Shown: positions 2,852-21,636 of the stretch, piece by piece | Layout: every line of letters starts with the position of its first letter | Numbering within the stretch: position 1 is the first letter of the stretch | Origin: Macrostomum hystrix | Lineage: Eukaryota; Animalia; Platyhelminthes | NCBI GenBank assembly: GCA_950097015.1 | Contig: CATNEN010000001.1 | Span: 17,670,001 to 17,734,000, forward strand | Direction of reading: 5' to 3' | DNA length: 64,000 nucleotides | Position numbers and translations under genes: made by a program | The notes under the pieces: model-generated | What the model was told of the DNA's origin: nothing | The model's input: the letters and a program-made list of their open reading frames with translations, nothing else | Databases searched by the model: none

Positions 2852-4603
2852 TCATACATCGGTCTCGAAGCAAGCCACGCTGCTCTTGTTAGAGTTGTGC
2901 TGCTGCTGCTGCTGTGCGTGATTTTGCTTGACCGAAGGTTGCGACTCCGAGCGGTGCATCGAAAGCAGATTGGCTTCGGTGACGGCGTCAACTTCCGACG
3001 CTTCTGAGGCCCGACTCCCCGACACCAGCGAGTTTTTCCTGCTGTCCTTGTAGGCCGGGCACGACTGCACGTGAACGTAGGTCTGCTTGTCCTCCGACTC
3101 AGTCTCCCGGTGGTAGAAGTAGTTGAAGTTAGACACGATGACTGGCACCGGCAGGGCGATCGTGAGCACACCGGCGATGGCGCACAGGGAGCCGACCAGT
3201 TTGCCCCACACCGTCACTGGCCGCATGTCTCCATAGCCGACGGTTGTCATGGTGACTACGGCCCACCAGAACGCCGATGGTATCGAGTCGAAGTGCGACT
3301 TCTCCGCTGAGTCGGCCTCGGCAAAGTACACAGCCGATGAGAAGAGGATTACGCTGATGAAGAGAAAGAAGACCAGCAGGCCGAGCTCTCGAACCGAGGC
3401 TTTGAGCGTCTGTCCAAGGATTTGCAGCCCCTTGAAGTGCCGGCTGAGCTTGAAGATCCTGAACACTCGAACCAGACGAATCACCCGCAGCACCGCCAGC
3501 GACATCGCCTGGTTGCTCCTGCTGTCGTCCGCTATCACCGTGCCCAGCGTGATGAAGTAGGGAATGATGGCCACAATGTCGATCAGGTTCATGATGTTCT
3601 TGAAGAAGCCAATCTTTGCCGGTGAAGATGCAAACCTGACAAGCAGCTCGAATGTGAACCAGATGATGCAGACTGTCTCAATGACGAAGAAGGACTCTCC
3701 GAACTGCGGTATGTCATCCTCCTCGATTACTTGGCTGGTGGTGTTTCCGTAGGTCTCGTTGATCACCTTGTAGTGCCGGAAGTGGGGCAGAGTCTCCACG
3801 CAGAAGATCACTATGCTGAGCAGGATGACGCACACTGAGATGATGGCGATCACGCGGGCTGCCATGGAACTCTCGGGGTACTCGAAAAGCAGCCACACCT
3901 TTCGTTGGAACTCATTATCCGGCAGCACCTTCACCTCCTCCTTGATGAAGCCTTCGTCGTCGCGGTATTTCTCAATGGCGTCTTCACCCAGCTCGTAGAA
4001 GCGGATCTCCTCTGTGAAGACGTCGATGGGCACGTTGACGGGTCGTCGAAGCCTGCCGCCGCTCTGGTAAAAGTACAAAATAGCGTCGAAAGAAGGCCGA
4101 TTGCGGTCGAAGAAATACTCGTTGCGCAACGGGTCGTAGTAGCGATTGCGCTTCTGCGAGCTTCCCAGCAGAGTCTCGGGAAACTGGTTCAGCGTTTTTA
4201 GCTGCGTCTCAAAGCGTAGTCCGCTGACGTTGATGACCACGCGGTCGCTGTCAAACGCCCTTGAAGCCGATTCGTCAAACTGGTTTTGTTGAAGATGCTG
4301 ATTGTGCTGCTGCTGCTGCTGCAGTTGCAGTTGCCCTCCAGCGGGGTGAGCTGTTGTTGGCGACATGTCATCGGGGTGAAGATCTTCGCCCGGTCTAGAC
4401 AGCTGAGATGGCGGCATCTTCGGGTAGGATCTGAAATGAATCGGAGTTCCTGGCTGAGACTCCTGCTGATACTGCTGATGCTGCTGATGCTGCTGATGCT
4501 GCTGATTGTGGGGCTTGTGGTACAGATGGTGCTTGTAGCTTGTACCAGGGATATCGGTACAACTGCCACTTTCTGTAGAGAGGCCAGCCATTGCCGCCTC
4601 CAT
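2852..4603 (-). CDS. Sh: Voltage-gated K+ channel, Shaker/Kv1 family (proximal unspliced isoform starting MEAAMAG)
   Basis: T1 domain ([13 protein letters not shown]...[15 protein letters not shown]), S4 ([18 protein letters not shown]), selectivity filter TVGYGD, S6 PVP motif and C-terminal PDZ ligand ETDV. The first ATG is at 4603; the track's 4684 start is not ATG. MEAAMAG resembles the MEVAM start of Aplysia Kv1 and mammalian Kv1.4. Confidence 0.97.
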
Positions 4604-4955
4604 GGCGTCCTGACAGTCTTCAGGGGCTCGCCGGCCCCTCAGACAGCCCAAGCACAGACACGGAGAGGCCGGAGGGAGAATCAAGGTCAGATGCGGACTG
4701 AGAGAGAACTCTTGCGAGTGGAATATTCAAGTGAAACAGCTGGTCACGCGGGACGGCTCAGGGGAGACACAAAGCGGGTCTCTCGTGGCCTGTGAGGCGC
4801 GGCTTCAGCGTCACTTTTCGATGGATGGCGGACTGGCCAAACCCTAACCCGCCTGTCGCAGAGGTCCGCGTTTCTATCCGTCCAGTATCAGTTGCTAGCC
4901 GGCTATTTCCCAATCTTGGGAGAATATTGGATTGGCTAGTGGCTTGGAGGTGGCG

Positions 4956-5147
4956 GGGTTGGAGGGGAGCAGAGAGAGGAGGCTGCTATTTGAGAAGGCG
5001 CTGAGATGAATAAAATGCCCAAAGAAAAAATGCCGTCAGCATAACAGACTAGCGCCGGCTTCTGAGTCGAGTATTCGACTCGAATAAAAGTCGACTCAGG
5101 CCAGAGTTTGAGTCGGGGCCATGAACTTGAACCACTTGATCTCCGGC
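4956..5147 (+). repeat. 192-bp perfect inverted repeat, arm A
   Basis: Base-by-base reverse complement of 9326-9517. Confidence 0.95.
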
Positions 5148-5840
5148 ACCTCCGATTGTTGGAGGTGCCAGCTGCCGGGGTTTCAGGGGCGCCGGGACGA
5201 GGAAAGAAAGAATTCTCGGAGAAGAGCAGAACTTGCGGGGGTGAGAAGCTGAATGCGATACGCGAGTGGCTGATCGCATGCTGCTGCTGCTGCTGCTGCT
5301 GCTGCCTACTCTGCCTCCTCGACCCGTCCTAGCCGCTGCTAGGGAAAAAGTGACTTGATTAGGCCGAGTCTCTGACCCCCCTGACTGGTCTATCTGGGAT
5401 TTCTCGGTTGGGGAAGTGAGTTGGGGGATGCGACAGGGCGGAGTTGGGTCTTCGACGATCCTGATCCCGTTTCTGTCTATCCTGTCCGTCTGTGTGACTG
5501 GCCAACACACACACACACAACTTGGAGCAGAGCCAATGGACAGGGTTCGGGTCAAGTAAAAGACAGAGAGGGAGAGAGAGGGGACAAATTAGATGGGGAT
5601 CCTGGGCTGCACAAATATCCCAATATCCCACTATGTTTTTTCTTCCCCTCTCTCAGCTGTCACAGCTGTAATAGGCCTAACTTTGTTAGCCTCAGCCATT
5701 GGCACAGACTCCAGACTGCTCCAGAAGGGGCAATTAATCTCCCTGCTCAATTATCCTTTGTGTTGTGAGCAATTAGGAAAAAGTATCCCAATTAGTTTGT
5801 GTTTAATATTGGCCGAGATTATTTACGAAAATTGCCATTT

Positions 5841-6891
5841 TCGGGATCGGGATCAGGGATCGGGATCAGGGATCGGGATCAGGGATCGGGATCAGGGATC
5901 GGGATCAGGGATCGGGATCAGGGATCGGGATCAGGGATCGGGATCAGGGATCGGGATCAGGGATCGGGATCAGGGATCGGGATCAGGGATCGGGATCAGG
6001 GATCGGGATCAGGGATCGGGATCAGGGATCGGGATCAGGGATCGGGATCAGGGATCGGGATCAGGGATCGGGATCAGGGATCGGGATCAGGGATCGGGAT
6101 CAGGGATCGGGATCAGGGATCGGGATCAGGGATCGGGATCAGGGATCGGGATCAGGGATCGGGATCAGGGATCGGGATCAGGGATCGGGATCAGGGATCG
6201 GGATCAGGGATCGGGATCAGGGATCGGGATCAGGGATCGGGATCAGGGATCGGGATCAGGGATCGGGATCAGGGATCGGGATCAGGGATCGGGATCAGGG
6301 ATCGGGATCAGGGATCGGGATCAGGGATCGGGATCAGGGATCGGGATCAGGGATCGGGATCAGGGATCGGGATCAGGGATCGGGATCAGGGATCGGGATC
6401 AGGGATCGGGATCAGGGATCGGGATCAGGGATCGGGATCAGGGATCGGGATCAGGGATCGGGATCAGGGATCGGGATCAGGGATCGGGATCAGGGATCGG
6501 GATCAGGGATCGGGATCAGGGATCGGGATCAGGGATCGGGATCAGGGATCGGGATCAGGGATCGGGATCAGGGATCGGGATCAGGGATCGGGATCAGGGA
6601 TCGGGATCAGGGATCGGGATCAGGGATCGGGATCAGGGATCGGGATCAGGGATCGGGATCAGGGATCGGGATCAGGGATCGGGATCAGGGATCGGGATCA
6701 GGGATCGGGATCAGGGATCGGGATCAGGGATCGGGATCAGGGATCGGGATCAGGGATCGGGATCAGGGATCGGGATCAGGGATCGGGATCAGGGATCGGG
6801 ATCAGGGATCGGGATCAGGGATCGGGATCAGGGATCGGGATCAGGGATCGGGATCAGGGATCGGGATCAGGGATCGGGATCAGGGATCGGG
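5841..6891. repeat. Homogeneous 13-bp minisatellite (GGGATCGGGATCA)n, ~80 copies
   Basis: Read directly from the sequence. Confidence 0.98.
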
Positions 6892-7379
6892 AGCGTCACA
6901 ATAATGTAACATAGACCCATCTGAGTTGTCTATCTCGATTTCCGCTCGAAGCAGTGGACAGCAGGAAGTGAGGAACTCACGTCTTTCTAAGAAACGCCGC
7001 CAGGAACGCAGCCATAACGGGCCCTACAGCAGCTTTTTGCGTTTAGAAATTTGCCTCATTCTATGTTTTTCTAGCTAAAATATATCTACAGGGCCTGTTT
7101 CAGATTATCAGTCGGGAGCAAATTTTATACCGATTTTTGTTCGAATTGCAAAAAAACACAACCCTATTTTTCATATAAGCTTAGAGCTACGATCGTGACG
7201 AATCGCGTATTAAGCAGGCTCCCACCCAGTGGCCGCTGTTGCTTTTAGGCAAAACCATTTACTGAATCAGTTTCACACGCTCGGCTTGTTGGTTGGACTT
7301 CCACAATGGGATCCAAATGCGAGTTTGAGTTGAATTAGAGTTAAAAATAAGCAGTTAATCTACACAAAGAAGCAGAATA

Positions 7380-7726
7380 AGACTGGGGAGAAGTAGACTG
7401 GGGAGAAGTAGACTGGGGAGAAGTAGACTGGGGAGAAGTAGACTGGGGAGAAGTAGACTGGGGAGAAGTAGACTGGGGAGAAGTAGACTGGGGAGAAGTA
7501 GACTGGGGAGAAGTAGACTGGGGAGAAGTAGACTGGGGAGAAGTAGACTGGGGAGAAGTAGACTGGGGAGAAGTAGACTGGGGAGAAGTAGACTGGGGAG
7601 AAGTAGACTGGGGAGAAGTAGACTGGGGAGAAGTAGACTGGGGAGAAGTAGACTGGGGAGAAGTAGACTGGGGAGAAGTAGACTGGGGAGAAGTAGACTG
7701 GGGAGAAGTAGACTGGGGAGAAGTAG
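7380..7726. repeat. 15-bp minisatellite (AGACTGGGGAGAAGT)n, ~23 copies
   Basis: Read directly from the sequence. Confidence 0.97.
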
Positions 7727-7855
7727 TTTGGTAAGAAGTAGATTTGAAAGTAGATTAGGAGACTGGACGAATAAATGAGAAGTAGATTAGGAGATTGGGT
7801 TTGAGTTTAACCAATCGAAAGAGTTAAAAGTAGATCAGAAGTAAATCAAACTGAC

Positions 7856-8092
7856 CTTCTGCTCTCAGTCATGGGGGTGAGGCTCTCTCCGCTGTAATCA
7901 ACGCAGCCTCCGCAGCCGCTGCTAGCAGTCGCAGCGCCCACCGCCCTTGACGACAGCTGGTGATGCTGGTGCTGCCTGAGCTGCTGCGGTGCTTCTGTGT
8001 CCAAACCGGCGACTCCTGGCAGGTTTGGCGACTGGCAGACTGAACCAGGGCCGAAGCGGCTGCTGGAGCAGGCGGTGCCCGTGGTCCCCTTC
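7856..8092 (-). CDS. Candidate internal alternative exon of Shaker (237 nt, phase 2-2)
   Basis: Branch point ACTAAC followed by pyrimidine-rich CCGACCTCCGCAG| acceptor, and donor AG|GTCAGT. Length is 79x3 and the frame is stop-free: (R)KGTTGTACSSS...LTPMTESR. Confidence 0.55.
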
Positions 8093-8151
8093 CTGCGGAG
8101 GTCGGGATGTTGTTAGTTGGCCACATATTCTCATTGAAATGCTACGCAATG

Positions 8152-8330
8152 TGTCTCGACTGTCCATAGACACTGCGGGAACTGTCTCGACTGTCCATAG
8201 ACACTGCGGGAACTGTCTCGACTGTCCATAGACACTGCGGGAACTGTCTCGACTGTCCATAGACACTGCGGGAACTGTCTCGACTGTCCATAGACACTGC
8301 GGGAACTGTCTCAACTGTCCAAAGACACTG
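8152..8330. repeat. 31-bp tandem repeat (TGTCTCGACTGTCCATAGACACTGCGGGAAC), ~5.7 copies
   Basis: Read directly from the sequence. Confidence 0.95.
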
Positions 8331-8336
8331 TGAAAA

Positions 8337-8538
8337 GTGTGGCAGAGCGGCCTTGTCGTGCAATTGACGCCCTTGAGGGCCAACCTCCAAGGCACAGTGA
8401 GAGTGTACACTGCCTGACGATGAGAAAGTCAGGGCAGAGGTACACCCCTGTGTGAGTATCTTAGTGCGTGTTTGTGCTCAGGAGTCAGTCAAATGGGATC
8501 TAGTGTCACCAATTGATGTGCCATTGCCCGCAGCCCTC
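8337..8538 (+). mobile_element. tRNA-derived SINE, internally deleted copy
   Basis: A-box-like GTGGCAGAGCGG joined directly to the body CTTGTCGTGCAATT...GCCCGCAGCCCTC shared with the other copies. Confidence 0.75.
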
Positions 8539-9092
8539 AATGAGAATATCATTGCTAGCATAATTATTATTATCTGTTATAGCTTTGATATTTAGGATGA
8601 TGGAACATGAGTTTAGTCAGTCAATCACTCTATGGGGTTAGTCAGTTCGGACATTCTAAATTTTTACATTTTTGACATTTTCCTAGCCTTCTTAAAGTGT
8701 ATAAAAAGTATATTTGCTAATTTTCTTAAAAGTTCAACTATTTGGGCTTGTCGAAAATGTTTTCTCATAACTGAATTTCGATTCCTACTACTCATAGTAG
8801 ATTTATAGAACTTTATTGTGTATTGAATTTTTCTAATTGTCGCTTTTTTTAATTCGGTGTTAACGCAGATTAACAAAAAAACAGATTTTCGATGAGATTC
8901 GGATTTCAGCAAGGAGTCACGTGATGTGTTTGAGATGAAATTCTAATTTAGCGGGTCAGTAATTCTGGCTCAGGTGGGAATGAAACAGGAAGACTTCGGG
9001 ATGTGGCTCGGCATTAATTAGGGATAATGAAAATGAAACTAGAGAGAAGACAAGCAGAAGGTGAGCAGGTGAGGTGAACCTGTCGCAGCTAC

Positions 9093-9352
9093 CTGCCGAA
9101 AGTGTGCTCATCGTCTACCGCTGCGCCTCGCCAAGAATGTTCCGAGTCGCTCGAGTGGTCATTGTGATGCCGGCTGATGGCAAAGCCTCCACCCAGGAAG
9201 CTCATTCCGCCGCCGCCGCCGCCACCGCCTCCGCCGCCACCGCCGCCTCCGACAGTCATGGCCTGGGTGTCCCTGGCGGCAGCGGCTGCCACCGATGCCG
9301 CGGCAGAGCACGGACTGCGCGCCCCGCCGGAGATCAAGTGGTTCAAGTTCAT
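9093..9352 (-). CDS. Candidate alternative first coding exon of Shaker (MNLNHLISGG...EHTFG)
   Basis: ATG at 9352, open frame with a poly-Gly tract, ending at CAG|GTAGCT in phase 2. In frame with both the 8092 exon and the 4430 acceptor. Confidence 0.5.
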
Positions 9353-9517
9353 GGCCCCGACTCAAACTCTGGCCTGAGTCGACTTTTATTCGAGTCGAAT
9401 ACTCGACTCAGAAGCCGGCGCTAGTCTGTTATGCTGACGGCATTTTTTCTTTGGGCATTTTATTCATCTCAGCGCCTTCTCAAATAGCAGCCTCCTCTCT
9501 CTGCTCCCCTCCAACCC
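9326..9517 (-). repeat. 192-bp perfect inverted repeat, arm B
   Basis: Reverse complement of 4956-5147. Covers the 5' flank and first 9 codons of the 9352 exon. Confidence 0.95.
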
Positions 9518-9936
9518 GACAGCCGAACCCCTTCGCTTTCCTGCTCCTTCCCATTTTCTCTCCCCCCTCAGCATCCGCAGCCTTCCGTCTGCTAAACCCG
9601 AACGCTACCGACTGTCCTCCAGGGTTGCCTTGGCTGAGGGCGGCGTTCATTGTGCGAGTCCGGTTCATTTTTTTTGCTTTCAAGAATTTTAATAAAAGGA
9701 CTGGAGAGAAAAATAGCCGAGTTAGCAAAGTGAAAGCGAGGGTAGCATCTCGACTCACATCTGCATCAATTCAATGCCTCCGATTGCTCAAATAATTTTT
9801 ATTATAGTGCTCAAAGTTTTCGCATTAACTCAAGACGAGCTTGAATTCGAAATCTTATATTTCTCGCCTTTTAGTTTTGAATATAGTATCTAGGGCACGC
9901 AGACTGTCGATTCATTCGGCAAATCCTTTTGCACAC

Positions 9937-9970
<34 letters not shown>

Positions 9971-10407
9971 TGGGACGAATGCCGCATGTGCGGCATGGGA
10001 GAGCAGAGGAGAGAAAGAAAATTTAGACGAGATTGTTATCGAGACGAGACTAGTTGTGGGATGAGAGAGAATGCTCAGAAGCTAATACATATACGCGTTG
10101 AGGGAGGCTATAGATTATATATAGTCATTTTTTGCAACTAAAGCTCACAGCAGTCATGCAGCTGTATCAGATGGCGCAATCTTAATTATAGAAAAGTAAC
10201 CAGCATGGATCTTTGCAAACCCGGGAGAGGGTAGAATGGAGACAGAGGAATTGCACTTTTGTCTCTGTGCGAGCGTCTTGGTTAAGTGCTGAGCGCGCGA
10301 CTTGCGTTGGTAGAGAACCCGCGGGTAATTGAAATTGTATGTTATAATCTTGAAACTCGGCAGTTCGTTCAGAAATAAGAGGAGAGGAGAGGATGGGAGG
10401 GGATGGA

Positions 10408-11077
10408 TAGAAAAGGAGAGGAGAGGAGAGGAGAGGAGAGGAGAGGAGAGGAGAGGAGAGGAGAGGAGAGGAGAGGAGGGGAGAGGAGAGGAGAGGAGAG
10501 GAGAGGAGAGGAGGGGAGAGGAGAGGAGAGGAGAGGAGAGGAGAGGAGAGGAGAGGAGAGGAGAGGAGAGGAGGGGAGAGGAGAGGAGAGGAGAGGAGGG
10601 GAGAGGAGAGGAGAGGAGAGGAGAGGAGAGGAGAGGAGAGGAGAGGAGAGGAGAGGAGGGGAGAGGAGAGGAGAGGAGAGGAGAGGAGAGGAGAGGAGAG
10701 GAGAGGAGAGGAGAGGAGAGGAGAGGAGAGGAGAGGAGGGGAGAGGAGAGGAGAGGAGGGGAGAGGAGAGGAGAGGAGAGGAGAGGAGAGGAGAGGAGAG
10801 GAGAGGAGAGGAGAGGAGAGGAGAGGAGAGGAGGGGAGAGGAGAGGAGAGGAGAGGAGAGGAGAGGAGAGGAGAGGAGAGGAGAGGAGAGGAGAGGAGAG
10901 GAGAGGAGAGGAGAGGAGAGGAGAGGAGAGGAGGGGAGAGGAGAGGAGAGGAGAGGAGAGGAGAGGAGAGGAGAGGAGAGGAGAGGAGAGGAGAGGAGAG
11001 GAGGGGAGAGGAGAGGAGAGGAGAGGAGAGGAGAGGAGAGGAGAGGAGAGGAGAGGAGAGGAGAGGAGAGGAGAGGA
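10408..11077. repeat. Polypurine microsatellite (GAGAG)n
   Basis: ~670 bp containing only A and G on the + strand. Confidence 0.98.
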
Positions 11078-11541
11078 GTGAAAGCATAGGAAATGAAAGA
11101 GAGTGAGTGAGTGTGGATGCAGTTTAAGCTTGTACATCAGTTTTGAAATCAGATGGTTGCATAGGCAATAGCCGATATGTCAAACTGCAGAGCGGAAAAC
11201 ATCATCAGCAGATGGGAGCTGAGTGCGGTCGGCCATTTATGAGCAGCGAGTTCCCGGATTCCAAAGTTCATAACAGAATTGAGCTGCCCCGCGAGGATTA
11301 ATGACCTTGAATTCCCCCGAGCAAGTTGCGTATGGCTCAAAACTAGGCGTACAATTCACAGCCCCCCAGCTCTTGTGGGGCAACTCAAATTAGAGTTTGT
11401 CGGAGAGGCCACGGTTTGAGCTACACGCTGCCTAGTATTGCACTTATTGAATTCAAAATTTAGATTGCTGATATTTTTGGACAGTCATAGAAACAAACAG
11501 AACTTCTGCAGCACGATTCTTCAGAACCTAACAAGCTGAAA

Positions 11542-12656
11542 TCCTCACAAGCCACAAACCTCACATGACACAAACCTCACAAGACACAAACCTCACAAGC
11601 CACAAACCTCACAAGACACAAACCTCACAAGACACAAACCTCACAAGACACAAACCTCACAAGACACAAACCTCACAAGACACAAACCTCACAAGACACA
11701 AACCTCACAAGACGCAAACCTCACAAGACACAAACCTCACAAGCCACAAACCTCACAAGACACAAACCTCACAAGACACAAACCTCACAAGACACAAACC
11801 TCACAAGACACAAACCTCACAAGACACAAACCTCACAAGACACAAACCTCACAAGACACAAACCTCACAAGACACAAACCTCACAAGACACAAACCTCAC
11901 AAGACACAAACCTCACAAGACACAAACCTCACAAGACACAAACCTCACAAGACACAAACCACACAAGACACAAACCTCACAAGACACAAACCTCACAAGA
12001 CACAAACCTCACAAGACACAAACCTCACAAGACACAAACCTCACAAGACACAAACCTCACAAGACACAAACCTCACAAGACACAAACCTCACAAGACACA
12101 AACCTCACAAGACACAAACCTCACAAGACACAAACCTCACAAGACGCAAACCTCACAAGACACAAACCTCACAAGACACAAACCTCACAAGACACAAACC
12201 TCACAAGACACAAACCTCACAAGACACAAACCTCACAAGCCACAAACCTCACAAGACACAAACCTCACAAGACACAAACCTCACAAGACACAAACCTCAC
12301 AAGCCACAAACCTCACAAGACACAAACCTCACAAGACACAAACCTCACAAGCCACAAACCTCACAAGACACAAACCTCACAAGACACAAACCTCGCAAGA
12401 CACAAACCTCACAAGACACAAACCTCACAAGACACAAACCTCACAAGACACAAACCTCACAAGACACAAACCTCACAAGCCACAAACCTCACAAGACACA
12501 AACCTCACAAGACACAAACCTCACAAGACACAAACCTCACAAGCCACAAACCTCACAAGACACAAACCTCACAAGACACAAACCTCACAAGACACAAACC
12601 TCACAAGACACAAACCTCACAAGACACAAACCTCACAAGACACAAACCTCACAAGC
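11542..12656. repeat. 16-bp minisatellite (CCTCACAAGACACAAA)n, ~70 copies
   Basis: Read directly from the sequence. Confidence 0.97.
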
Positions 12657-13754
12657 GAGGTCAATGTTGAATTTTGATATGTGACTAGCTAACAACTGTT
12701 CCTTATTATATCTAATGCTAAGAGTTTGCCAAACTTTTTAAAAAATGGCTTCTTTTATGGGCTTGCAGTGTTAAATTTGCAGCTGTGAATCGGATACAAA
12801 CATTTTTTTCGAAAACGCAGTCAGTTTAGTTGAAGTCTAACAGAATTAAAAAACAGTTTTTATTCTGCTTCAGAGCTATCTGTGACGTTCCTCCTAAACA
12901 CTACAAAGGAATGCACCGGAAAACATAAATTCAATCAGTGCAGTTCCACTGGTTATTGCTCTGTACTTTATTATAGTATTGTTGAACTGCAAAGCGCAAG
13001 GCACAGCTGCAGTTATAACTATATCAAGTTTGGCTTTGGTAATTGGCAATTAATATGCTTTTTTACTGCATAGAGTAATTTACTTTCATGTTGTTCCATC
13101 TGTGCAGCTCAATAATAGTGCTGCACTAGAAAGGTAATGAAATAGCTAGCTTGTGTAATGCCATTTCGGTAAGGTAAATAAATAACTTTTTCCCCATTTA
13201 TTTTGTACTTAATTCCGTGAAAGCTGTAACATGCCTTCAGTTAATTACACTTCTCACTTCTCATTCGCTATTAACAGTAGAAACACCATGTTATTTTTAC
13301 ACCTGGGATTTTTACACCACTAAATGATCGATTTTCGTAAAATACCACCAAATGAATCAAGCTTTCAAAGCAGTCCGACGTCAGCATCGTCTAGATAGTC
13401 AGTGATTCTTGTTCGAAGACCCTGGATTTGAAATACCCTGAGGTTTCTTTGTACTGCAAAAGTACTGCTGTACTTTTAACGAGTTGTGAAAGAGTGAATT
13501 AGTACATTATTTGTTCCACAAACTTCTAATTTAATCTTATTAGAAATTTCATAATTTCACTGTCGGTCTTTTGATGATTGAAGTTGTCCCTGTAAAATTA
13601 TATTGCACTTCTGCCCGACTGTCGGTACACTCGATTGGAAATTATTCTACCATCACTTCTTGGCTTCATGATTTGTTTGCTACTTAGAGTAGTATCATAT
13701 AAAATTTGCCTCACAACAACGTGTTATTAAAACGTGATGGTATAAATTTCTAAA

Positions 13755-14257
13755 AGGTCAATACTGATATATAATAGGTCGATACTGATATATAACAGGT
13801 CGATACTGATATCTAACAGGTCGATACTGATATCTAACAGGTCGATGCAGATATCTAACAGGACGATACTGATATCTAACAGGACGATACTGATATCTAA
13901 CAGGTCGATACAGATATCTAACAGGACGATACTGATATCTAACAGGACGATACTGATATCTAACAGGTCGATTCAGATAATCTAGCAGGTCGATACTGAT
14001 ATCTAACAGGTCGATACTGATATCTAAAAGGTCAATACTGATATATAATAGGTCGATACTGATATCTAACAGGTCGATACTGATATCTAACAGGTCGATA
14101 CTGATATCTAACAGGTCGATACTGATATCTAACAGGTCGATACTGATATCTAACAGGTCGATACAGATATCTAACAGGTCGATACTGATATCTAACAGGT
14201 CGATACTGATATCTAACAGGTCGATACTGATATCGAACACGTCGATACTGATATCTA
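13755..14257. repeat. 21-bp minisatellite (AGGTCGATACTGATATCTAAC)n
   Basis: Read directly from the sequence. Confidence 0.95.
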
Positions 14258-14637
14258 AAAAAAAGCAACTGGAAATATGAAAAGGCAAATTTTCTAGCTT
14301 AGACAGTCGGGCCCACAATTCCTTATCTTCTTGGGGGAACATTTGCCGGGTGAGGGACGTGACAAAAGCACCGCTTTAGCCATTGCTGATCGTTTTTAAA
14401 AGCAAAATATATGGCACCCATGAGACTGATGGCTGTAGACCAGGGAACTTAAATGAAAGACTAGCGCAAGGAAAATTTGGAAAGATACTAAATCGAAAAG
14501 GTCAGGTGCTTGTGCAGATGGGCCTTAGGTAAGGCAGTTGCACCCTGAACCTTAGCTAGTGGGACATTGCTGGAGCCGATATACTGAATTTTATCACTGG
14601 TTCGTTCTTATGGGCGCGTTGGGTGTGTGATTCATTG

Positions 14638-14858
<221 letters not shown>

Positions 14859-16589
14859 TGGTTACAGTCGTGGCAGTGAAAATGTACTCACAGTATCATT
14901 GCAAATATTGTGACGCTGGCTCTCAAACTTGACTGCTGCTGCTGCTGCTGTGGTCGCAGCCAGTTCAGCTGGCATCGCCAAGTAGCAGTCCTGATTTGCT
15001 AACTATTTGTTCAAGCCCGCTTCGCTTGAAGCAGGCAAGACGCTCCAGACACCACCGCCGGCTTTGCCTTTGGTTTCCTAGGCGATGCTCTTGAATGGTC
15101 GGACAGAGACTAAATATAAGCTGACCGCTAGCTACAATGTCAACAAGTGTCAACAATTGTCTGCTGCCTATTTTTGGACAGGCACCGAAATCCTCTGTGC
15201 TGCTTTTAATACGCAGAGATTTGGCCTGTGTGCCTGCCCAGTCGCAATCTGAAAGCAGGCGCTAAATGCTAAATTCGGGGGGGAATGATGCTTTTATGAA
15301 GGCGGAGAGGCACTTCCAAACCACTCCCACTGAACATTTGCCGGCACAATGAACGCAGAAGCGGATGAAACAGTGTGCAGTGTCTGTGCTGTGCTGCCAA
15401 GTTGAGGGAATGGAAACGACCAGTGCGAACTGCAACTACCGCGATGGGAAGAGAACGGTGGGGAAGGGCCAGTTATATTTGCTTCAGCTTTTGCCCAAAT
15501 CCTGCTGGATTGCATAGTGAGTGGACATGGCTTCAGCGTCTTGTATAGCCGTGTTACAGACAAAGTCCTTTTTGCTGTAGTTTCAAAAATTAAGTGTGCG
15601 GCTTGCGTCTGATGCGAAAACGTCTAATGTGTTTTTTTAGATTAACAGTAGAAAGACCAAGCCTTCCCGTCCTGGAGGAAGACGGCATGTGTATTTCAAA
15701 TGCCCCGCTGCCTACTTCACGATAACTTCCAAACCGAATGCCCGATTTTCGTAAAATAAGGGAGAAATCAAGCATTTTTGCAACTGATCCCACCGACCAC
15801 GGTATGCACTCCCCATGGAAACCCATTTCGCAATAAATAGATGCGTTAGTATAAATCGTTATTTTAAATCGTATAGTGTGGCGTTATAAGATTGAGCGTC
15901 ATTTAAGGTGCAACATTATGACGTCATTTGATGTGCACCTGTCCGTCACAACCCAAATGGGATAAATATTTGAACCAGTCGAATAGGCAAAGCCTTGGTG
16001 CCACACCTAGGCCCCAAGAATTCATCACATACTTGTGGGATAAATGAAAAGACTGAGATTAAGCGGTATAAATCATTTCACTCAGACTGCAGTCGGGGAG
16101 AATACTACAGGTGCCATAGATATTTATCTTTGCTAGTTTGTTCCTAGAATTCTTATGACTGATACAGTTATTGTAGGGGTATAGAATCATAGCAAATCGC
16201 TGCAAATCACAGGCCTTGGATCTAAGACCGTGGCTTCTAATTAAATAATAAAGTGCATTCTCTCAATCAAGTTGATAAAGAAAATTCTAATTCTACTTGA
16301 GGATACTACTTATAGTAGAAAAGCTGGCATTGTAAAATATATAAAAATTATGAAAATCAACAAACTCAGATGCCATAGATGCCATACTTTTATAGCTTAT
16401 CGCATAATCAATTAAAGCAAGTCTTGCAGAAAATGCGTCAAGACTGGGTGAAGAGTTTTACTAATGAAAACTCTTGACTAACTCTCGGTCCATTGGAGCA
16501 TTATCACAATTGAGCACATGCCAACTAAACAGCGGAGAAAGTATTAAAAATTTCCTGGATGAGGGCAATGTCTTGTAAGAGTACATTAT

Positions 16590-16847
16590 GGCGGCGAGGC
16601 CACATTCATTTGGGGCGCAGCCGCGGAGAGAAGGCTTGGGGGCTTGTCGTGCAATTTACGCCCTCGAGGGCCAACCTCCAAGACGCATTGAGAGTGTACA
16701 CTGCCTGACGATGAAAAAGTCAGGGCAGGTTTACACACCTGTGTGAGTGTGTGCTCAGGAGTCAGCGAAATGGGCAGAATTGCCTCCTCGCTGGCTGCGG
16801 GTCTAGTGTCACCAAATGATGTGCCATTGCCCGCAGCCCTCCTGCAA
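16590..16847 (+). mobile_element. tRNA-derived SINE, 5'-truncated copy
   Basis: GCGGCGAGGCCACATTCATTTGGG...CAGCCCTCCTGCAA is nearly identical to the copies at 19.1, 36.7 and 57.5 kb. Confidence 0.8.
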
Positions 16848-17864
16848 GAAATTCGGTAGCGTGTATTGGCCCCAAAAGTCCATGGACTGAAAAACTGTAC
16901 ACAGCAATAGCTGCGGCTGTACATCTGTCTCTACCAGGTCGCGATTTTAAATTCTGGGTCTAATTAGCCAGTCACACATAGATTTACACTACGGATTAAA
17001 AAACTGTACAAAAAGTGCTCAATATGTTCTACATAATTCTATTGCTATGAGACGTTGGACTAGAAAAGCATTTGGCCGCAGACTGGCAGGAATATATACC
17101 AAGAATCACCGAATCAGGCAAAACTTCTACCAGCAGAGGATATTAATCCCAAGATTTGCCGCTAATCTCACAGATGTTTGAGAACGCGTAATCCGTGTGT
17201 ATACAGAAGCATATACTCGTGACTGAAGAGTGGTCGATTAATTTTAACAAAAATAAACGGCATAGCATCGACCTTAATACCGTTTGCTGAGTCAGTGGAA
17301 GAACTTTAATGATTTTCTAATTCGATAATACAGCATATATTGCTCCGTCATTCAGAGCTGTCCATGGACTGAATAGCAGTACACATAAACAAGAACACAA
17401 GAGCTATAAGCCTCACTGAAGTGCTCAAAGTTTGAATCTAGAATCACAACAAGAAGTTCGTTTGTGTGTTTTCAGTTTTCTGCTCCAGTTGATTAGAACG
17501 GAAGAGTAGAACTAAATATGAGAGTTTTAGGCTGCGAGAGGTCCTCGGAGACTGGAAATGCGAAGCATCCGTTACACAAGACTGTAGGTAGCTGTCTTGT
17601 GGCACAGCCAGGCCTTTGGCCTGCGAGCAGGTGAAGTGGAATGCGAAAGCTTCAAGTTGCCAGGAGACAAGGAAAGCAGGAAATTCACCTGACAAATTTG
17701 GCTACGGATAAACTATAGCTATGTCTATGAAGATTGTAGTAGACAGTTTCAGTAGCATCGACTGTCTGTTACTAACTTTTAAAATAGACAATATTTGCCA
17801 CTTTATGAGAAAGACTGTTATGATTTTCACCGATAGAAAACACTGCATGACTAGGATATTATAA

Positions 17865-18513
17865 GTATGAGAAAGGCAGTATGAGACAGTATGAGAAAGA
17901 CAGTATGAGAAAGACAGTATGAGAAAGACAGTATGAGAAAGACAGTATGAGAAAGACAGTATGAGAAAGGCAGTATGAGGAAGACAGTATGAGAAAGGCA
18001 GTATGAGAAAGGCAGTATGAGAAAGGCAGTATGAGGAAGACAGTATGAGAAAGGCAGTATGAGGAAGACAGTATGAGAAAGGCAGTATGAGAAAGGCAGT
18101 ATGAGAAAGGCAGTATGAGAAAGGCAGTATGAGAAAGGCAGTATGAGAAAGGCAGTATGAGGAAGACAGTATGAGAAAGGCAGTATGAGGAAGACAGTAT
18201 GAGAAAGGCAATATGAGAAAGACAGTATGAGAAAGGCAGTATGAGAAAGACAATATGAGGAAGACAGTATGAGAAAGACAATATGAGAAAGACAGTATGA
18301 GAAAGGCAGTATGAGAAAGACAGTATGAGAAAGACAGTATGAGAAAGGCAGTATGAGAAAGGCAATATGAGAAAGGCAATATGAGGAAGACAGTATGAGA
18401 AAGACAGTATGAGAAAGGCAGTATGAGAAAGGCAATATGAGAAAGGCAGTATGAGGAAGACAGTATGAGAAAGGCAGTATGAGAAAGGCAGTATGAGAAA
18501 GGCAGTATGAGAA
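17865..18513. repeat. 14-bp minisatellite (GTATGAGAAAGGCA)n
   Basis: Read directly from the sequence. Confidence 0.96.
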
Positions 18514-19127
18514 GCAGAGCATGAAATACATATATCAGAAAGAGCACACGAGCACAGAGTGCAGGGACAAACTCAGTTGAACCGAGCCCAAATATTTTCA
18601 ACAGACAAAAGAGTTCCCCTTTCTCAAAAGCAGCAAACTAAAGTGTAGCAACAGCTGGAGCAGGGCTGCCTTACAAAGGATGAAATCACAATTTGGCTAA
18701 CAGTCACGGCGCAGAATCGACAAGCCAGTCAGTCTTTTGTGAGTAGCTAACCCACCCATGAGAACACTAGCTAATCATTCTCACTTTCCGCTCTATTAAT
18801 CATTTTGAGAACAGGTTTACAGACTCGAGAAGCCGCCTCACACAGTAAGCAAGGCTTATTAAAATGAGGAAACCAGACAAAGCCGGCCACAATGCGTATG
18901 AAGTGAATGGCGAAGTTCATTTGGGCCTAAAATACAAGTGCTCTAATTAGCTTGAAGTAATGGAAATTAGATTCTTTATAATTTAATTTTTACGACGAAT
19001 GTAGCAAGTATTTACGAGTATATTATACGTTATTGCGAGCCACATGAACCTAGCAGCAAATTTAAATTTTACCGACAAGTTTACTTAAAAGGTTTATTGA
19101 TTATTGGTTAGATCACTTAGCCAATTA

Positions 19128-19451
19128 TCACGCACCATGGACCCTGAGCTCGATTCCGCGGCGAGGCCACACTCATTTGGGGCGCAGCCGCGGAGAGAAG
19201 GCTTGGGGGCTTGTCGTGCAATTTACGCCATTGAGGGCCAACCTCCAAGGCACAGTGAGAGGTACACTGCCTGACGATGAGACAGTCAGGGCAGATGTAC
19301 ACACCTGTGTGAGCGTATGCCTGCGTTAGGTATCTGTGTGCATGTGTGCTCAGGAGTCAGCGAAATGGGCAGAATTGCCTCCTCGCTGGCTGCGGGTCTA
19401 GTGTCACCAAATGATGTGCCATTGCCCGCAGCCCTCCTGCAATTATTATTC
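19128..19451 (+). mobile_element. tRNA-derived SINE copy with (ATT)n tail
   Basis: B-box-like GAGCTCGATTCC, shared body, tail AATTATTATT. Confidence 0.82.
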
Positions 19452-19539
19452 ATATTTATTTATCACTGATTCACTCACTGAAGTGAATCTGTTCTTTTGT
19501 GATCTCCCCCACCGTGAGTCAGCTGTCCAGGTCACTCAC

Positions 19540-19653
19540 CTGCTGTCTGATTTGCTTCGGCTCATCGTACTGCGCGAGTTCACTGGCATCAATGACGAAC
19601 CGAAGCTGCGTCGAAAGCCGAACGCAGAGTTCAGGCCATAGAAGCCGCCGATC

Positions 19654-19693
<40 letters not shown>

Positions 19694-19736
19694 TGCCGCC
19701 GCCACGAATCCTGATGCTCTGGCTTCGACCCCACAT
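19540..19736 (-). CDS. Candidate alternative first coding exon of Shaker (MWGRSQS...GGFYGL...KSDS)
   Basis: ATG at 19736, open frame, strong donor CAG|GTGAGT in phase 2. Confidence 0.55.
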
Positions 19737-19800
19737 TGGATGGAGCTGTGGCAATCTCAGTTGCTGGGTGAATCTTTTCAGCTTTCCGATGCGCACTTAC

Positions 19801-19826
19801 CTCAAAACAGCCATTACCCAGCACAT
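19801..19826 (-). CDS. Candidate very short alternative N-terminus of Shaker (MCWVMAVL-R)
   Basis: ATG at 19826, then 8 codons plus AG, then consensus donor GAG|GTAAGT in phase 2. Confidence 0.45.
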
Positions 19827-20257
19827 ATTGTGATCTCGCCTGGACCAACTGACCAATCAGATCGCGCTGTCCGCCCACCCGCCCACCCGGCCCAGTCTCA
19901 AGCAGGAAATCTGAAGCGAAAATGAGCCCTCAGCAGGGAGACATGTCACACCTCACAGTCAGTTCCTGCCTCCCACTCTCCTGCTCACTCATTCGCCTCA
20001 AGCGTCCTATAAAAAACATCCCACCGATGCTAAGAAATATGTATTAGCACCTGTGTAGATCATATTTAGGAAATAGTACAAACCTGCCATTTCATTGGCT
20101 GCCTGTTTGTGATCCTCAGTTATAAAGCACTGACCGTTTAAGTCTCAGGTGGCATTTCAGCGATGCATGTCCTTGAGAACCTGAGATGCTGGTCAGTACT
20201 TCCCGAAGAAACTGCTGGGAATCTGAAATTTCCCAAAAACATACCGTAGATACAGCA

Positions 20258-21636
20258 ATGAAGATCCCATAGAAACTATACTGAAGATCCCATACACACT
20301 ACACTGAAGATCCCACACAAACTATACTGAAGATCCCATACACACTGCACTGAAGATCCCACACAAACCGCACTGAAGATCCCATACACACTGCACTGAA
20401 GATCCCATTCACACTGCCTGAAGATCCCACACAAACCGCACTGAAGATCCCATACACACTGCACTGAAGATCCCATACAAACTATACTGAAGATCCCATA
20501 CACACTGCACTGAAGATCCCATACACACTACACTGAAGATCCCATACAAACTATACTGAAGATCCCATACACACTGCACTGAAGATCCCATACACACTGC
20601 ACTGAAGATCCCATACACACTGCACTGAAGATCCCATACACACTGCACTGAAGATCCCATACACACTGCACTGAAGATCCCATACACACTGCACTGAAGA
20701 TCCCATACACACTGCACTGAAGATCCCATACAAACTATACTGAAGATCCTATACACACTGCACTGAAGATCCCACACACACTGCACTGAAGATCCCATAC
20801 AAACTATACTGAAGATCCCATACACACTGCACTGAAGATCCCATACACACTGCACTGAAGATCCCATACACACTGCACTGAAGATCCCATACACACTGCA
20901 CTGAAGATCCCATACACACTACACTGAAGATCCCATACACACTGCACTGAAGATCCCACACAAACTACACTGAAGATCCCATACACACTGCACTGAAGAT
21001 CCCATACACACTGCACTGAAGATCCCATACACACTGCACTGAAGATCCCATACACACTGCACTGAAGATCCCATACAAACTACACTGAAGATCCCATACA
21101 CACTGCACTGAAGATCCCATACACACTGCACTGAAGATCCCACACACACTGCACTGAAGATCCCACACAAACTACACTGAAGATCCCACACAAACTACAC
21201 TGAAGATCCCACACAAACTACACTGAAGATCCCACACAAACTACACTGAAGATCCCACACAAACTACACTGAAGATCCCACACAAACTACACTGAAGATC
21301 CCATACACACTGCACTGAAGATCCCATACACACTGCACTGAAGATCCCATACACACTGCACTGAAGATCCCATACACACTGCACTGAAGATCCCACACAC
21401 ACTGCACTGAAGATCCCACACAAACCGCACTGAAGATCCCACACAAACTACACTGAAGATCCCACACAAACCGCACTGAAGATCCCACACAAACTACACT
21501 GAAGATCCCACACAAACTACACTGAAGATCCCACACAAACTACACTGAAGATCCCATACACACTGCACTGAAGATCCCACACAAACTACACTGAAGATCC
21601 CATACACACTGCACTGAAGATCCCATACACACTGCC
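20258..21636. repeat. 23-bp minisatellite (ACTGAAGATCCCATACACACTGC)n, ~60 copies
   Basis: Read directly from the sequence. Confidence 0.97.

What the first reader, a model, noticed from the sequence alone, without database searches (positions are those of the whole stretch)
4956..9517. Perfect 192-bp inverted repeat linking an alternative first exon to the region just upstream of the Kv1 core
Seen: 4956-5147 and 9326-9517 are exact reverse complements of unique, non-tandem sequence, 4.2 kb apart. Arm B spans the 5' leader, ATG and first 9 codons of the 9352 exon. Arm A lies ~350 bp upstream of the proximal ATG and ~530 bp from the common acceptor. Inference, three options: (i) any pre-mRNA starting at or above 9.5 kb folds a 192-bp duplex that loops out the 9093 donor and the 8092-7856 cassette, acting like a docking/selector splicing switch and an ADAR or Dicer substrate; (ii) if arm A lies in the proximal isoform's 5'UTR, that mRNA is a built-in antisense to the start codon of the distal isoform; (iii) recombination between the arms would invert the 4.2-kb exon-bearing segment. 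Perfect identity implies a very recent origin or ongoing gene conversion.
Basis: partly seen in the sequence, partly recalled or inferred. Interest (0 to 1): 0.85.

Follow-up and report, generated by a model that had tools for sequence, protein, structure and literature searches.

The report
Young inverted copy beside Shaker gene
A 192-base piece from the start of a possible upstream first exon of a flatworm Shaker potassium-channel gene has been copied, upside down and letter-perfect, to a spot 4.2 kb away just upstream of the channel's main start; it looks like a recent one-off DNA-repair scar, and no evidence yet shows that it acts as a splicing switch.

Summary
4956-5147 and 9326-9517 are exact reverse complements (192 nt, 4178 nt apart). 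They are the only two copies in the 220-Mb genome, which is very likely Macrostomum hystrix. Arm B covers a leader, an ATG and 9 codons of an 86-codon ORF whose GT donor is in phase with an acceptor at 4431|4430. Arm A lies 353 nt upstream of the proximal ATG.

Homology stops dead at both arm ends. Arm A alone carries a repair-type junction signature: a 9-nt direct repeat (TTGGAGGTG) on both sides and a 9-nt inverted copy of the flank overlapping the arm end by 3 nt. Arm B continues the purine-rich composition of its own flank.

Best reading: arm A is a young, private, templated inverted insertion copied from arm B during double-strand-break repair, possibly at a transposon excision site.

A minus-strand pre-mRNA spanning both arms could form a duplex of about -409 kcal/mol, and ADAR-type genes exist. 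No transcript or read data could be obtained, the distal exon has no detectable homologues, and there is no selector-like complementarity for other exons. So the RNA-switch, antisense and invertible-segment readings remain untested. Interest is modest.

The parts
4956..5147 (+). Arm A: inverted copy of the 192-nt segment. It reads on the + strand what arm B reads on the - strand. Inferred to be the derived, inserted copy.
   Evidence: 100% identity. (only two copies in the genome). (junction signature found only at this arm).
9326..9517 (-). Arm B: inferred source copy. On the gene (-) strand it holds a purine-rich start, a 12-codon uORF, a cluster of GAGTCG palindromes, the ATG at 9352 and 9 codons.
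   Evidence: Purine content is 0.75 in the arm's first 40 nt, 0.77 in the B-side flank and 0.53 in the A-side flank. No flanking direct repeat.
4944..4952 (+). Left copy of the 9-nt direct repeat TTGGAGGTG flanking arm A (target-site-duplication-like).
   Evidence: a shared 9-mer occurs in 0.7% of shuffles of the 40+40-nt flanks. GGAGGTG/CACCTCC occurs 7 times in 64 kb on both strands, and 3 of these lie within 14 nt of arm A's ends.
5159..5167 (+). Right copy of the 9-nt direct repeat TTGGAGGTG.
5145..5169 (.). Junction hairpin: GGCACCTCC (5145-5153; its first 3 nt are the last 3 nt of arm A), then the spacer GATTGTT, then GGAGGTGCC (5161-5169). It is a 9-nt inverted copy of the right flank, joined to the arm through a 3-nt overlap.
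   Evidence: Sequence read.
4953..5158 (+). Inferred inserted block of 206 nt: GCG + arm A + ACCTCCGATTG. The predicted empty site is ...GGCTTGGAGGTG|CCAGCTG...
   Evidence: Inference.
9093..9352 (-). Putative distal alternative first exon: ATG at 9352, 86 codons plus 2 nt, donor AG|GTAGCT with GT at 9092-9091. Not verified by transcripts or homology.
   Evidence: ORF and phase. (no relatives).
7856..8092 (-). Putative 237-nt cassette exon, open in the phase set by the distal donor and the common acceptor. It lies between the arms.
2852..4430 (-). Common exon of the Shaker/Kv1 gene (T1 domain, S1-S6, pore, ETDV end). It begins after the acceptor tttcag| (AG at 4432-4431).
   Evidence: M. lignano isoforms P0005 and P0006 diverge exactly N-terminal of SFPKM, which corresponds to SYPKM here.
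4431..4603 (-). Proximal N-terminus (MEAAMAGL...), read through into the common exon. It matches M. lignano P0005 (MEVAMAGI...).
9429..9467 (-). uORF MNKMPKEKMPSA* inside arm B (three upstream ATGs at 9467, 9458, 9443). The same sequence sits in arm A on the + strand.
9357..9410 (-). Cluster of four GAGTCG motifs in the order forward, reverse, reverse, forward, forming two small hairpins just upstream of the ATG. The mirror copy in arm A is at 5063-5116.
   Evidence: Eight of the 34 motifs in the window lie in the two arms.
4910..4935 (.). CCAAT motifs next to arm A: two CCAAT on the gene strand (ATTGG at 4926-4930 and 4931-4935 on +) and one on the + strand (4910-4914). Possible proximal promoter elements.
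   Evidence: The promoter role is inference only.

Best explanation
The repeat is most likely a real, evolutionarily young, one-off structural mutation. A 192-nt segment native to 9326-9517 (arm B) was copied in inverted orientation into a double-strand break about 4.2 kb away, creating arm A. Arm B carries the 5' region of a possible distal first exon of a Shaker/Kv1 gene in a Macrostomum flatworm, very likely M. hystrix. Arm A sits 353 nt upstream of the proximal start codon.

The insertion site bears the marks of error-prone, template-copying break repair:
- the target 9-mer TTGGAGGTG is present on both sides of the insert;
- a 9-nt inverted copy of the right flank is fused to the end of the copied segment through a 3-nt overlap (GGC);
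- a few untemplated bases sit at each side.

This pattern is what repair of a staggered or hairpin-capped break leaves behind. One example is the excision of a cut-and-paste transposon with 8-9-bp target duplications, filled with 'filler DNA' copied from a nearby template.

Shown: the repeat, its copy number, its sharp ends and the junction motifs. Inferred: the polarity (B to A), the repair mechanism and the young age.

As a by-product, any minus-strand pre-mRNA that runs from above 9517 to below 4956 contains two perfectly complementary 192-nt stretches. It could fold into a long duplex that loops out the distal donor and the 8092-7856 cassette. Whether such transcripts exist, and whether the duplex changes splicing, editing or RNA stability, is unknown. 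Nothing indicates selection for it.
For: - 192 nt, 100% identity, 4178 nt apart.
- Only two copies in the 220-Mb assembly. The flanks 4600-5842 and 8574-9800 are single-copy.
- No residual similarity in 400 nt of flank on either side (best local scores 24 and 19). So this is a discrete copied block, not an eroded old duplication.
- Direct 9-mer TTGGAGGTG at 4944-4952 and 5159-5167. Nothing comparable flanks arm B (0.7% of shuffles).
- GGAGGTG/CACCTCC occurs 7 times in 64 kb, and three of these lie within 14 nt of arm A's ends, one of them inverted and overlapping the arm end.
- Purine content of the arm's start (0.75) continues that of arm B's flank (0.77), not arm A's (0.53).
- At arm B the ATG opens an 86-codon frame ending in a phase-compatible donor. 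At arm A the same ATG runs into a stop after 43 codons.
- The genome holds many hAT-type (at least 64) and MULE-type (at least 41) transposase matches, several with identical long open frames. Cut-and-paste elements making 8-9-bp target duplications are therefore present.
- Templated and snap-back insertions at repaired breaks are established (PMC4912351, PMC5068794, PMC9303309; found).
- Assembly context: the assembly statistics match M. hystrix (220 Mb, 42 contigs). It was built with canu from PacBio long reads of an inbred line and polished with Arrow and Pilon. Such reads would normally span a 4.6-kb structure (my inference).
Against: - No reads could be laid on the region, so the assembly at the four junctions is unverified. 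Pilon polishing could have erased a few differences between the arms.
- 192 nt is long for the templated insertions typical of polymerase-theta end joining, which are mostly tens of bases (own knowledge).
- No microhomology is visible at the left junction.
- The 9-mer duplication rests on one motif and could reflect serial template switching rather than a true target-site duplication.
- Neutrality is assumed, not shown.
Confidence: 0.6

Rival explanations
1. Functional RNA duplex. The two arms pair in distal-promoter pre-mRNAs and thereby set splice choice, or mark the transcript for ADAR editing or Dicer cleavage. Splice effects could be bringing the 9093 donor close to the 4431|4430 acceptor, skipping or circularising the 8092-7856 cassette. 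The result would tune which inactivation-ball isoform of the channel is made.
For: - Geometry: arm B lies 233 nt upstream of the distal donor, arm A lies 526 nt upstream of the common acceptor, and the cassette is in the loop.
- Predicted duplex energy is -408.7 kcal/mol.
- The genome encodes at least two ADAR-type genes, with dsrm domains directly upstream of A_deamin on C9 and on C2.
- Inverted repeats of only 30-40 nt suffice to drive back-splicing in other animals (PMC4201285).
- Relatives do use alternative N-termini joined at the same point (P0005, P0006, P0008).
Against: - No transcript evidence at all.
- The distal exon is unconfirmed: weak donor, uATGs, no homologues.
- There are no selector-like complements for other exons.
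- Perfect identity with sharp ends and a repair scar points to an event too recent to have been shaped by selection.
- If the distal TSS lies inside or below arm B, distal transcripts carry only part of the arm or none.
Confidence: 0.12
2. Assembly or polishing artefact. One arm, probably arm A with its 206-nt block, does not exist in the animal, or the arms differ in reality and were homogenised by short-read polishing.
For: - The assembly matching these statistics was made from noisy PacBio reads with canu and polished with Arrow and Pilon.
- No independent assembly or protein record of this locus exists in the collections searched.
Against: - The structure lies 17.67 Mb into a 27.6-Mb contig, not at a contig end.
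- Known long-read palindrome artefacts give adjacent arms, not 192-nt arms 4.2 kb apart (own knowledge).
- The flank duplication plus snap-back copy at arm A is a biological repair signature that assemblers do not create.
- The neighbouring 1-kb tandem array is perfectly regular, which suggests good local consensus.
Confidence: 0.08
3. Recombination substrate or invertible segment. The arms are kept identical by gene conversion, and crossing-over between them flips 5148-9325. That would uncouple the distal exon body and the cassette from the channel core, either as a polymorphic inversion or as a somatic switch.
For: - 192 nt of perfect inverted identity can support homologous recombination (own knowledge).
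- Earlier notes of this scan report conversion between inverted gene copies elsewhere in this genome (unchecked).
Against: - No recombinase or any Pfam domain lies between or beside the arms.
- Sharp homology ends and the lack of any diverged flanking homology argue against an old, conversion-maintained repeat.
- Only one orientation is present in the assembly, and no reads were available.
Confidence: 0.05
4. Terminal inverted repeats of a foldback-like or non-autonomous DNA transposon that carries the tandem arrays.
For: The outline fits superficially: perfect inverted ends enclose 4.2 kb that is rich in tandem repeats (13-mer x 81, 15-mer x 24, 31-mer x 6).
Against: - The arm occurs only twice in 220 Mb, and the internal unique parts are single-copy.
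- There is no target-site duplication around the whole unit: the outer flanks are GGAGGTGGCG and GACAGCCGAA.
- No transposase is present.
- The interior holds phase-coherent candidate exons of the host gene.
Confidence: 0.02

Closest known systems
Templated ('filler DNA') insertions at repaired double-strand breaks: polymerase-theta / synthesis-dependent microhomology-mediated end joining, and transposon excision footprints
   Same: A copy of nearby sequence is inserted at a break. The ends are sharp, a short snap-back inverted copy of the flank is joined through a 3-nt overlap, a few untemplated bases are present, and the flank is duplicated on both sides (PMC4912351, PMC5068794, PMC9303309).
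   Different: At 192 nt the insert is much longer than typical theta-mediated inserts. The template lies 4.2 kb away. No excised element or empty site has been seen, and the enzyme is unknown.
Replication-based template switching that yields local inverted duplications (FoSTeS/MMBIR-type events)
   Same: The copy is inverted and close to its source, and the junction is complex, with reuse of a short motif in both orientations.
   Different: Those events usually duplicate kilobases to megabases and show microhomology at each switch. Here the left junction shows none.
Intronic inverted repeats that promote exon skipping or back-splicing (circRNA), e.g. Alu pairs and the Drosophila laccase2 repeats
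   Same: Two complementary stretches bracket a candidate internal exon (8092-7856) that has both splice sites. The arm length far exceeds the 30-40 nt shown to suffice (PMC4201285, PMC4617980).
   Different: One arm overlaps the leader and start codon of a candidate first exon instead of lying in an intron. No back-splice or skipping data exist, and the repeat is private rather than a repeat family.
Docking-site/selector RNA pairing in mutually exclusive splicing (Dscam exon 6 type; own knowledge)
   Same: Long-range intramolecular RNA pairing between a site near the common exon and a site near an alternative exon.
   Different: A docking system has one conserved site complementary to a selector beside every alternative exon. 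Here only one pair exists, it is perfect and long rather than short and imperfect, and it looks recent.
ADAR editing of Kv1/Shaker transcripts (squid, fly, mammalian Kv1.1; own knowledge)
   Same: The gene family is the same, and ADAR-type genes are present in this genome. A 192-bp duplex would be a hyper-editing substrate.
   Different: The known Kv1 editing sites lie in the channel core and use short local hairpins. Here the duplex would cover a 5' leader, a start codon and intron sequence.

Membership tests
Templated insertion / filler DNA at a repaired double-strand break | The inserted sequence is an exact copy of sequence elsewhere in the genome, usually nearby | tested here: met
   192/192 identity with a segment 4.2 kb away. 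No other copy in the genome.
Templated insertion / filler DNA at a repaired double-strand break | Sharp ends with no flanking homology between donor and acceptor sites | tested here: met
   Local alignment of 400-nt flanks gives only noise (scores 24 and 19).
Templated insertion / filler DNA at a repaired double-strand break | Junction marks: microhomology, snap-back (inverted) copies of the flank, untemplated bases | tested here: met
   GGCACCTCC at 5145-5153 is the inverse of GGAGGTGCC at 5161-5169, with a 3-nt GGC overlap with the arm. GCG and GATTG are not templated by either site. Three of the seven motif occurrences in 64 kb lie at the junctions. The left junction shows no microhomology.
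Templated insertion / filler DNA at a repaired double-strand break | Typical insert size of a few to some tens of bases for polymerase-theta repair | tested here: not met
   The insert is 206 nt (192 nt templated), longer than the usual range (own knowledge of the literature found). Membership in the narrow theta-mediated class is therefore left open; the broader class of filler DNA / synthesis-dependent repair still fits.
Transposon excision footprint | Both copies of an 8-9-bp target-site duplication retained, with palindromic bases between them | tested here: inconclusive
   TTGGAGGTG is present twice, with an inverted flank copy between. hAT and MULE transposases are present in the genome. 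No element or occupied allele was seen.
DNA transposon / foldback element with terminal inverted repeats | Multiple copies in the genome | tested here: not met
   Only the two arms match, and the interior unique parts are single-copy.
DNA transposon / foldback element with terminal inverted repeats | Target-site duplication flanking the whole element; transposase or relatives that have one | tested here: not met
   The outer flanks differ. No Pfam domain in 10 ORFs between or across the arms.
Docking-site/selector system for mutually exclusive exons | One docking site complementary to a selector next to each alternative exon | tested here: not met
   Apart from the arm pair and CTG/CAG runs, no inverted match of 13 nt or more links 4430-5842 to 5843-22000. 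Shorter or imperfect selectors would have been missed.
Docking-site/selector system for mutually exclusive exons | Conservation or covariation of the pairing across species | not testable with these tools
Inverted-repeat-driven back-splicing / exon skipping | Complementary sequences bracket an exon that has both an acceptor and a donor | tested here: inconclusive
   The arms bracket 8092-7856, which has AG|G and AG|GTCAGT sites and an open, phase-correct frame. The exon itself is unverified.
Inverted-repeat-driven back-splicing / exon skipping | Back-splice or skipping junction reads | not testable with these tools
ADAR hyper-editing substrate | The organism encodes ADAR (dsRNA-binding domains plus adenosine deaminase domain) | tested here: met
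   C9: dsrm at 215253-215438 and 214762-214959 directly upstream of A_deamin at 212636-214566. C2: dsrm at 4205085-4205264 upstream of A_deamin at 4197903-4200470.
ADAR hyper-editing substrate | Both arms present in one transcript, with clustered A-to-G mismatches | not testable with these tools
   No RNA reads were available.
Shaker/Kv1 channel gene (context) | T1/BTB, ion-transport and pore domains; close similarity to known Kv1 channels | tested here: met
   The 610-aa ORF 2852-4684(-) is 83-87% identical to Macrostomum lignano Kv1 proteins that carry PF02214, PF00520 and PF07885.

The most novel reading that the evidence does not exclude
A very recent inverted insertion has created a 192-bp intramolecular RNA duplex between the start of a distal first exon and the intron just upstream of the common acceptor of a Shaker channel gene. 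That duplex would measurably redirect isoform choice or trigger ADAR or small-RNA processing in neurons, for example by cassette skipping or circularisation, or by editing of the distal start codon. If so, it would be a natural, datable example of a long-range RNA-pairing splice regulator being born from a DNA-repair accident.
Probability: 0.1. Interest if true: 0.65.

Novelty: new member of a known kind. Interest (0 to 1): 0.3.

Why it matters
As it stands, this is a clean, well-delimited example of a templated inverted insertion with a readable repair scar in a flatworm genome. It is useful as an illustration of how break repair seeds inverted repeats inside genes, but it is not surprising.

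It would matter more if the duplex proved active. The locus would then show the first step by which long-range RNA pairing elements arise, of the kind that control alternative exons, circular RNAs or editing. It would do so in a gene family (Kv1/Shaker) whose N-terminal isoforms set channel inactivation. Because the predicted empty site is known, animals or lines with and without arm A could be compared directly.

Tried and rejected
Tools that gave nothing or were unavailable:
- Independent copies of the locus. Exact look-up of ten ORFs that cross the arm junctions, or encode the channel, found none in the 15-billion-protein collection. Homology searches found no protein above 87% identity, so this species' locus is not represented.
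- Orthologous locus. The look-up of encoding contigs for the M. lignano fragment P0123 was closed.
In those 200 kb the only local inverted pair (L016) belongs to a transposon family with about 500 first-look candidates in this genome, so no second private repeat was found. The sample is too small for a rate.

Tests with negative results:
- Conservation of the distal exon. phmmer of the 87-aa ORF against 1.84 billion representatives gave only two low-complexity hits. tblastn of the relatives' N-termini against the window gave only low-complexity matches upstream of 4312.
- RNA families. Rfam at E<=1 over 4300-9900 gave nothing. The arm on its own does not fold unusually well (z = -1.3).
- Transposon reading. 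Rejected on copy number, the lack of an outer target duplication and the lack of a transposase.
- Docking/selector reading. Rejected as membership.
- Paralogous or second-haplotype locus. None in the assembly for either N-terminal exon.

Left out: I did not build or search a joined (spliced) protein model. Exons were translated and searched one by one by reference.

Full report
1. THE OBSERVATION

The repeat finder reports arms 4956-5147 and 9326-9517 as 192 nt, 100% complementary, with 4178 nt between them. A direct string comparison confirms identity.

In the whole 64-kb window this is the only perfect inverted pair of 60 nt or more. The other twelve pairs are members of a dispersed family at 81-94% identity. 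The arm has normal complexity and is not tandem.

Searching the window's own assembly (220,453,370 bases, 42 contigs) with the arm and with both extended flanks finds exactly the two arms. The flanks are otherwise single-copy. The exception is a high-copy dispersed element at about 8349-8573, which has nothing to do with the arms.

2. WHERE WE ARE

The 610-codon ORF 2852-4684 on the minus strand is a Shaker/Kv1 channel. Its closest relatives (83-87% identity) are Macrostomum lignano proteins.

The assembly statistics equal those published for Macrostomum hystrix: about 220 Mb in 42 contigs. That assembly was built with canu from PacBio reads of the inbred line SR1, polished with Arrow and Pilon, and haplotigs were purged (PMC10468722). 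Earlier notes of this scan name the same species. I take the species as very likely, not proven.

3. THE GENE MODEL AROUND THE ARMS

I translated exon by exon, by reference, and built no joined model.

- Proximal start: the ATG is at 4603-4601 (MEAAMAGL...), which matches M. lignano P0005 (MEVAMAGI...).
- Common acceptor: tttcag| has its AG at 4432-4431, so the common exon starts at 4430.
- Divergence point: M. lignano isoforms P0005 and P0006, and a Logan-derived relative P0008, diverge from each other exactly N-terminal of SFPK(M/L), which corresponds to SYPKM here. Alternative N-termini joined at this acceptor are therefore a family trait.
- Distal ORF: it starts at 9352, runs 86 codons plus 2 nt and ends in AG|GTAGCT, with GT at 9092-9091.
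- Candidate cassette: 8092-7856 is 237 nt and open in the required phase.

Both the distal ORF and the cassette would give ...R|SYPKM. Arm A lies 353 nt from the proximal ATG and 526 nt from the common exon.

The distal exon is nevertheless weakly supported:
- The region is GC-rich, and four of six frames are open across it.
- Any ORF whose last sense codon ends in G offers a phase-2 GT donor at its stop.
- The donor lacks the +5 G.
- The leader inside the arm has three upstream ATGs and a 12-codon uORF.
- The peptide has no relatives among 1.84 billion representatives or in the relatives' N-termini.

4. WHICH ARM IS THE COPY, AND HOW IT AROSE

Homology ends abruptly. 400 nt of flank on either side align no better than noise. 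An old duplication kept identical by conversion should show eroded homology outside the converted tract, and none is seen. The block is therefore a discrete, recent copy.

Only arm A has a junction signature:
- TTGGAGGTG stands at 4944-4952 and again at 5159-5167. A 9-mer shared between the 40-nt flanks occurs in 0.7% of shuffles, and nothing of 7 nt or more is shared around arm B.
- GGCACCTCC at 5145-5153 is the inverse complement of GGAGGTGCC at 5161-5169. Its first three bases are the last three of the arm.
- GGAGGTG or its complement occurs only seven times in the whole window on both strands, and three of these lie within 14 nt of arm A's ends.

In addition, the purine-rich start of the arm (0.75) continues the composition of arm B's outer flank (0.77), not arm A's (0.53). 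The arm's ATG opens a long frame only at arm B.

I therefore read arm B as native. I read a 206-nt block, 4953-5158 (GCG + arm + ACCTCCGATTG), as an insertion into ...GGCTTGGAGGTG|CCAGCTG....

A duplicated flank, a short palindromic copy of that flank, a few untemplated bases and a stretch of 'filler' copied from a nearby template form the classical picture of error-prone repair of a staggered or hairpin-capped break. Snap-back and templated synthesis are documented for polymerase-theta/alt-EJ repair (PMC4912351, PMC5068794, PMC9303309).

A retained 8-9-bp duplication with palindromic bases is also what excision of hAT- or Mutator-type transposons leaves (own knowledge). Both transposase types are abundant in this genome, several with identical long open frames.

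The mechanism is inference. The insert is longer than typical theta-mediated inserts, and the left junction shows no microhomology.

5. WHAT IT IS NOT

- Not a transposon with terminal inverted repeats. It has two copies only, no outer target duplication, and no Pfam domain in ten ORFs between or across the arms. Candidate host exons lie inside it.
- Not a docking/selector array. Between 4430-5842 and 5843-22000 the only inverted matches of 13 nt or more are the arm pair and CTG/CAG runs, which are not collinear with the stem.
- Not a known RNA family.
- The arm alone folds no better than shuffles (z = -1.3). It does contain four GAGTCG motifs in a forward, reverse, reverse, forward arrangement that form two small hairpins just upstream of the ATG.

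6. CONSEQUENCES (PREDICTED, NOT SHOWN)

On the gene strand, a pre-mRNA running from above 9517 to below 4956 would carry arm B in sense and arm A as its perfect complement. The computed duplex energy is -408.7 kcal/mol.

Pairing would loop out the distal donor and the 8092-7856 cassette. It would bring the donor (233 nt from arm B) near the acceptor (526 nt from arm A). In other animals, intronic inverted repeats of 30-40 nt suffice to promote back-splicing (PMC4201285).

The genome encodes at least two ADAR-type genes, with dsRNA-binding domains directly upstream of the deaminase domain on C9 and C2. A long duplex could therefore be edited.

Against reading (ii): two CCAAT motifs on the gene strand lie directly downstream of arm A. 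This suggests, weakly, that arm A is upstream of the proximal promoter and not in its 5'UTR.

AATAAAA motifs sit about 110 and 40 nt upstream of the ATG.

This species' locus is absent from the protein collections.

7. ARTEFACT?

I could not check this with reads. Several points argue against it:
- The structure lies 17.67 Mb inside a 27.6-Mb contig.
- Long reads normally span 4.6 kb.
- The known long-read palindrome artefact gives abutting arms.
- Assemblers do not create flank duplications with snap-back copies.

Short-read polishing could, however, have removed one or two real differences between the arms. 'Perfect' should therefore be read as 'perfect or nearly so'.

8. AGE

With 384 nt at risk, and an assumed 1e-9 to 1e-8 substitutions per site per generation, half of such pairs would have acquired a difference after roughly 2e5 to 2e6 generations. 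The rate is my assumption and was not measured here. The event is recent on an evolutionary scale but need not be line-specific.

In 200 kb of other sampled genome I found no second private local inverted repeat. The single hit is a transposon family with about 500 first-look candidates in this genome. Such events are therefore not dense, although earlier notes of this scan list several one-off inverted duplications elsewhere in this genome (unchecked).

9. VERDICT

The most likely reading (about 0.6) is a young, private, templated inverted insertion: a repair scar that happens to place a perfect complement of a candidate first exon's start inside that exon's own intron. This is a new example of a known kind of mutation.

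The interesting possibility that it already acts through RNA pairing stays open at about 0.1. It is directly testable with the public reads of the sequencing project.

Noticed in passing
window 8349-8573: A high-copy dispersed element inside the intron between the arms. It has more than 1000 first-look candidates in the genome, with copies at 74-97% identity. It is SINE- or MITE-like, not classified, and unrelated to the arms.
   Followed up: partly
window 5843-6892, 7380-7742, 8152-8330, 10378-11078, 11543-12655: The upstream region of the channel gene is packed with very regular tandem arrays: 13-mer x 80.8 at 100%, 15-mer x 24, 31-mer x 5.8, AGAGG x 140 and 16-mer x 70. They create long spurious ORFs in several frames.
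   Followed up: no
window 9357-9410 (mirror copy at 5063-5116): Four GAGTCG motifs (TGAGTCG, close to an AP-1-type half site) are arranged forward, reverse, reverse, forward within 52 nt just upstream of the distal ATG. They form two small hairpins. They could be transcription-factor sites or a 5'UTR structure.
   Followed up: partly
window 5278-5305 and 9937-9970: A (CTG)9 run and a (CAG)11 run are perfectly complementary over 28 nt. They lie 131 nt inside arm A and 420 nt outside arm B, so they are not collinear with the main stem. They are probably just trinucleotide repeats.
   Followed up: partly
G000:C9:212636-215438 (L012) and G000:C2:4197903-4205264 (L011): Two ADAR-type genes (dsRNA-binding domains followed by an adenosine-deaminase domain) are present in this flatworm genome. 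A third, partial A_deamin match lies on C25.
   Followed up: partly
window 16591-16847, 19128-19455, 31895-32194, 36722-37021, 57323-57656: A dispersed repeat family with members in both orientations (81-94% identity) accounts for all other inverted pairs in the window.
   Followed up: no
L016:4590-4996 and L016:8129-8527 (G000:C1:7004590-7008527): Two inverted copies (95% identity) of a roughly 430-nt element with about 500 first-look candidates in this genome. It is either a transposon with long terminal inverted repeats or two nested insertions.
   Followed up: partly
genome-wide: Several hAT-type (open frames of 601, 716 and 816 aa) and MULE-type (385 and 484 aa) transposase genes recur at many places with identical open-frame lengths. 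This suggests recently active cut-and-paste families.
   Followed up: no
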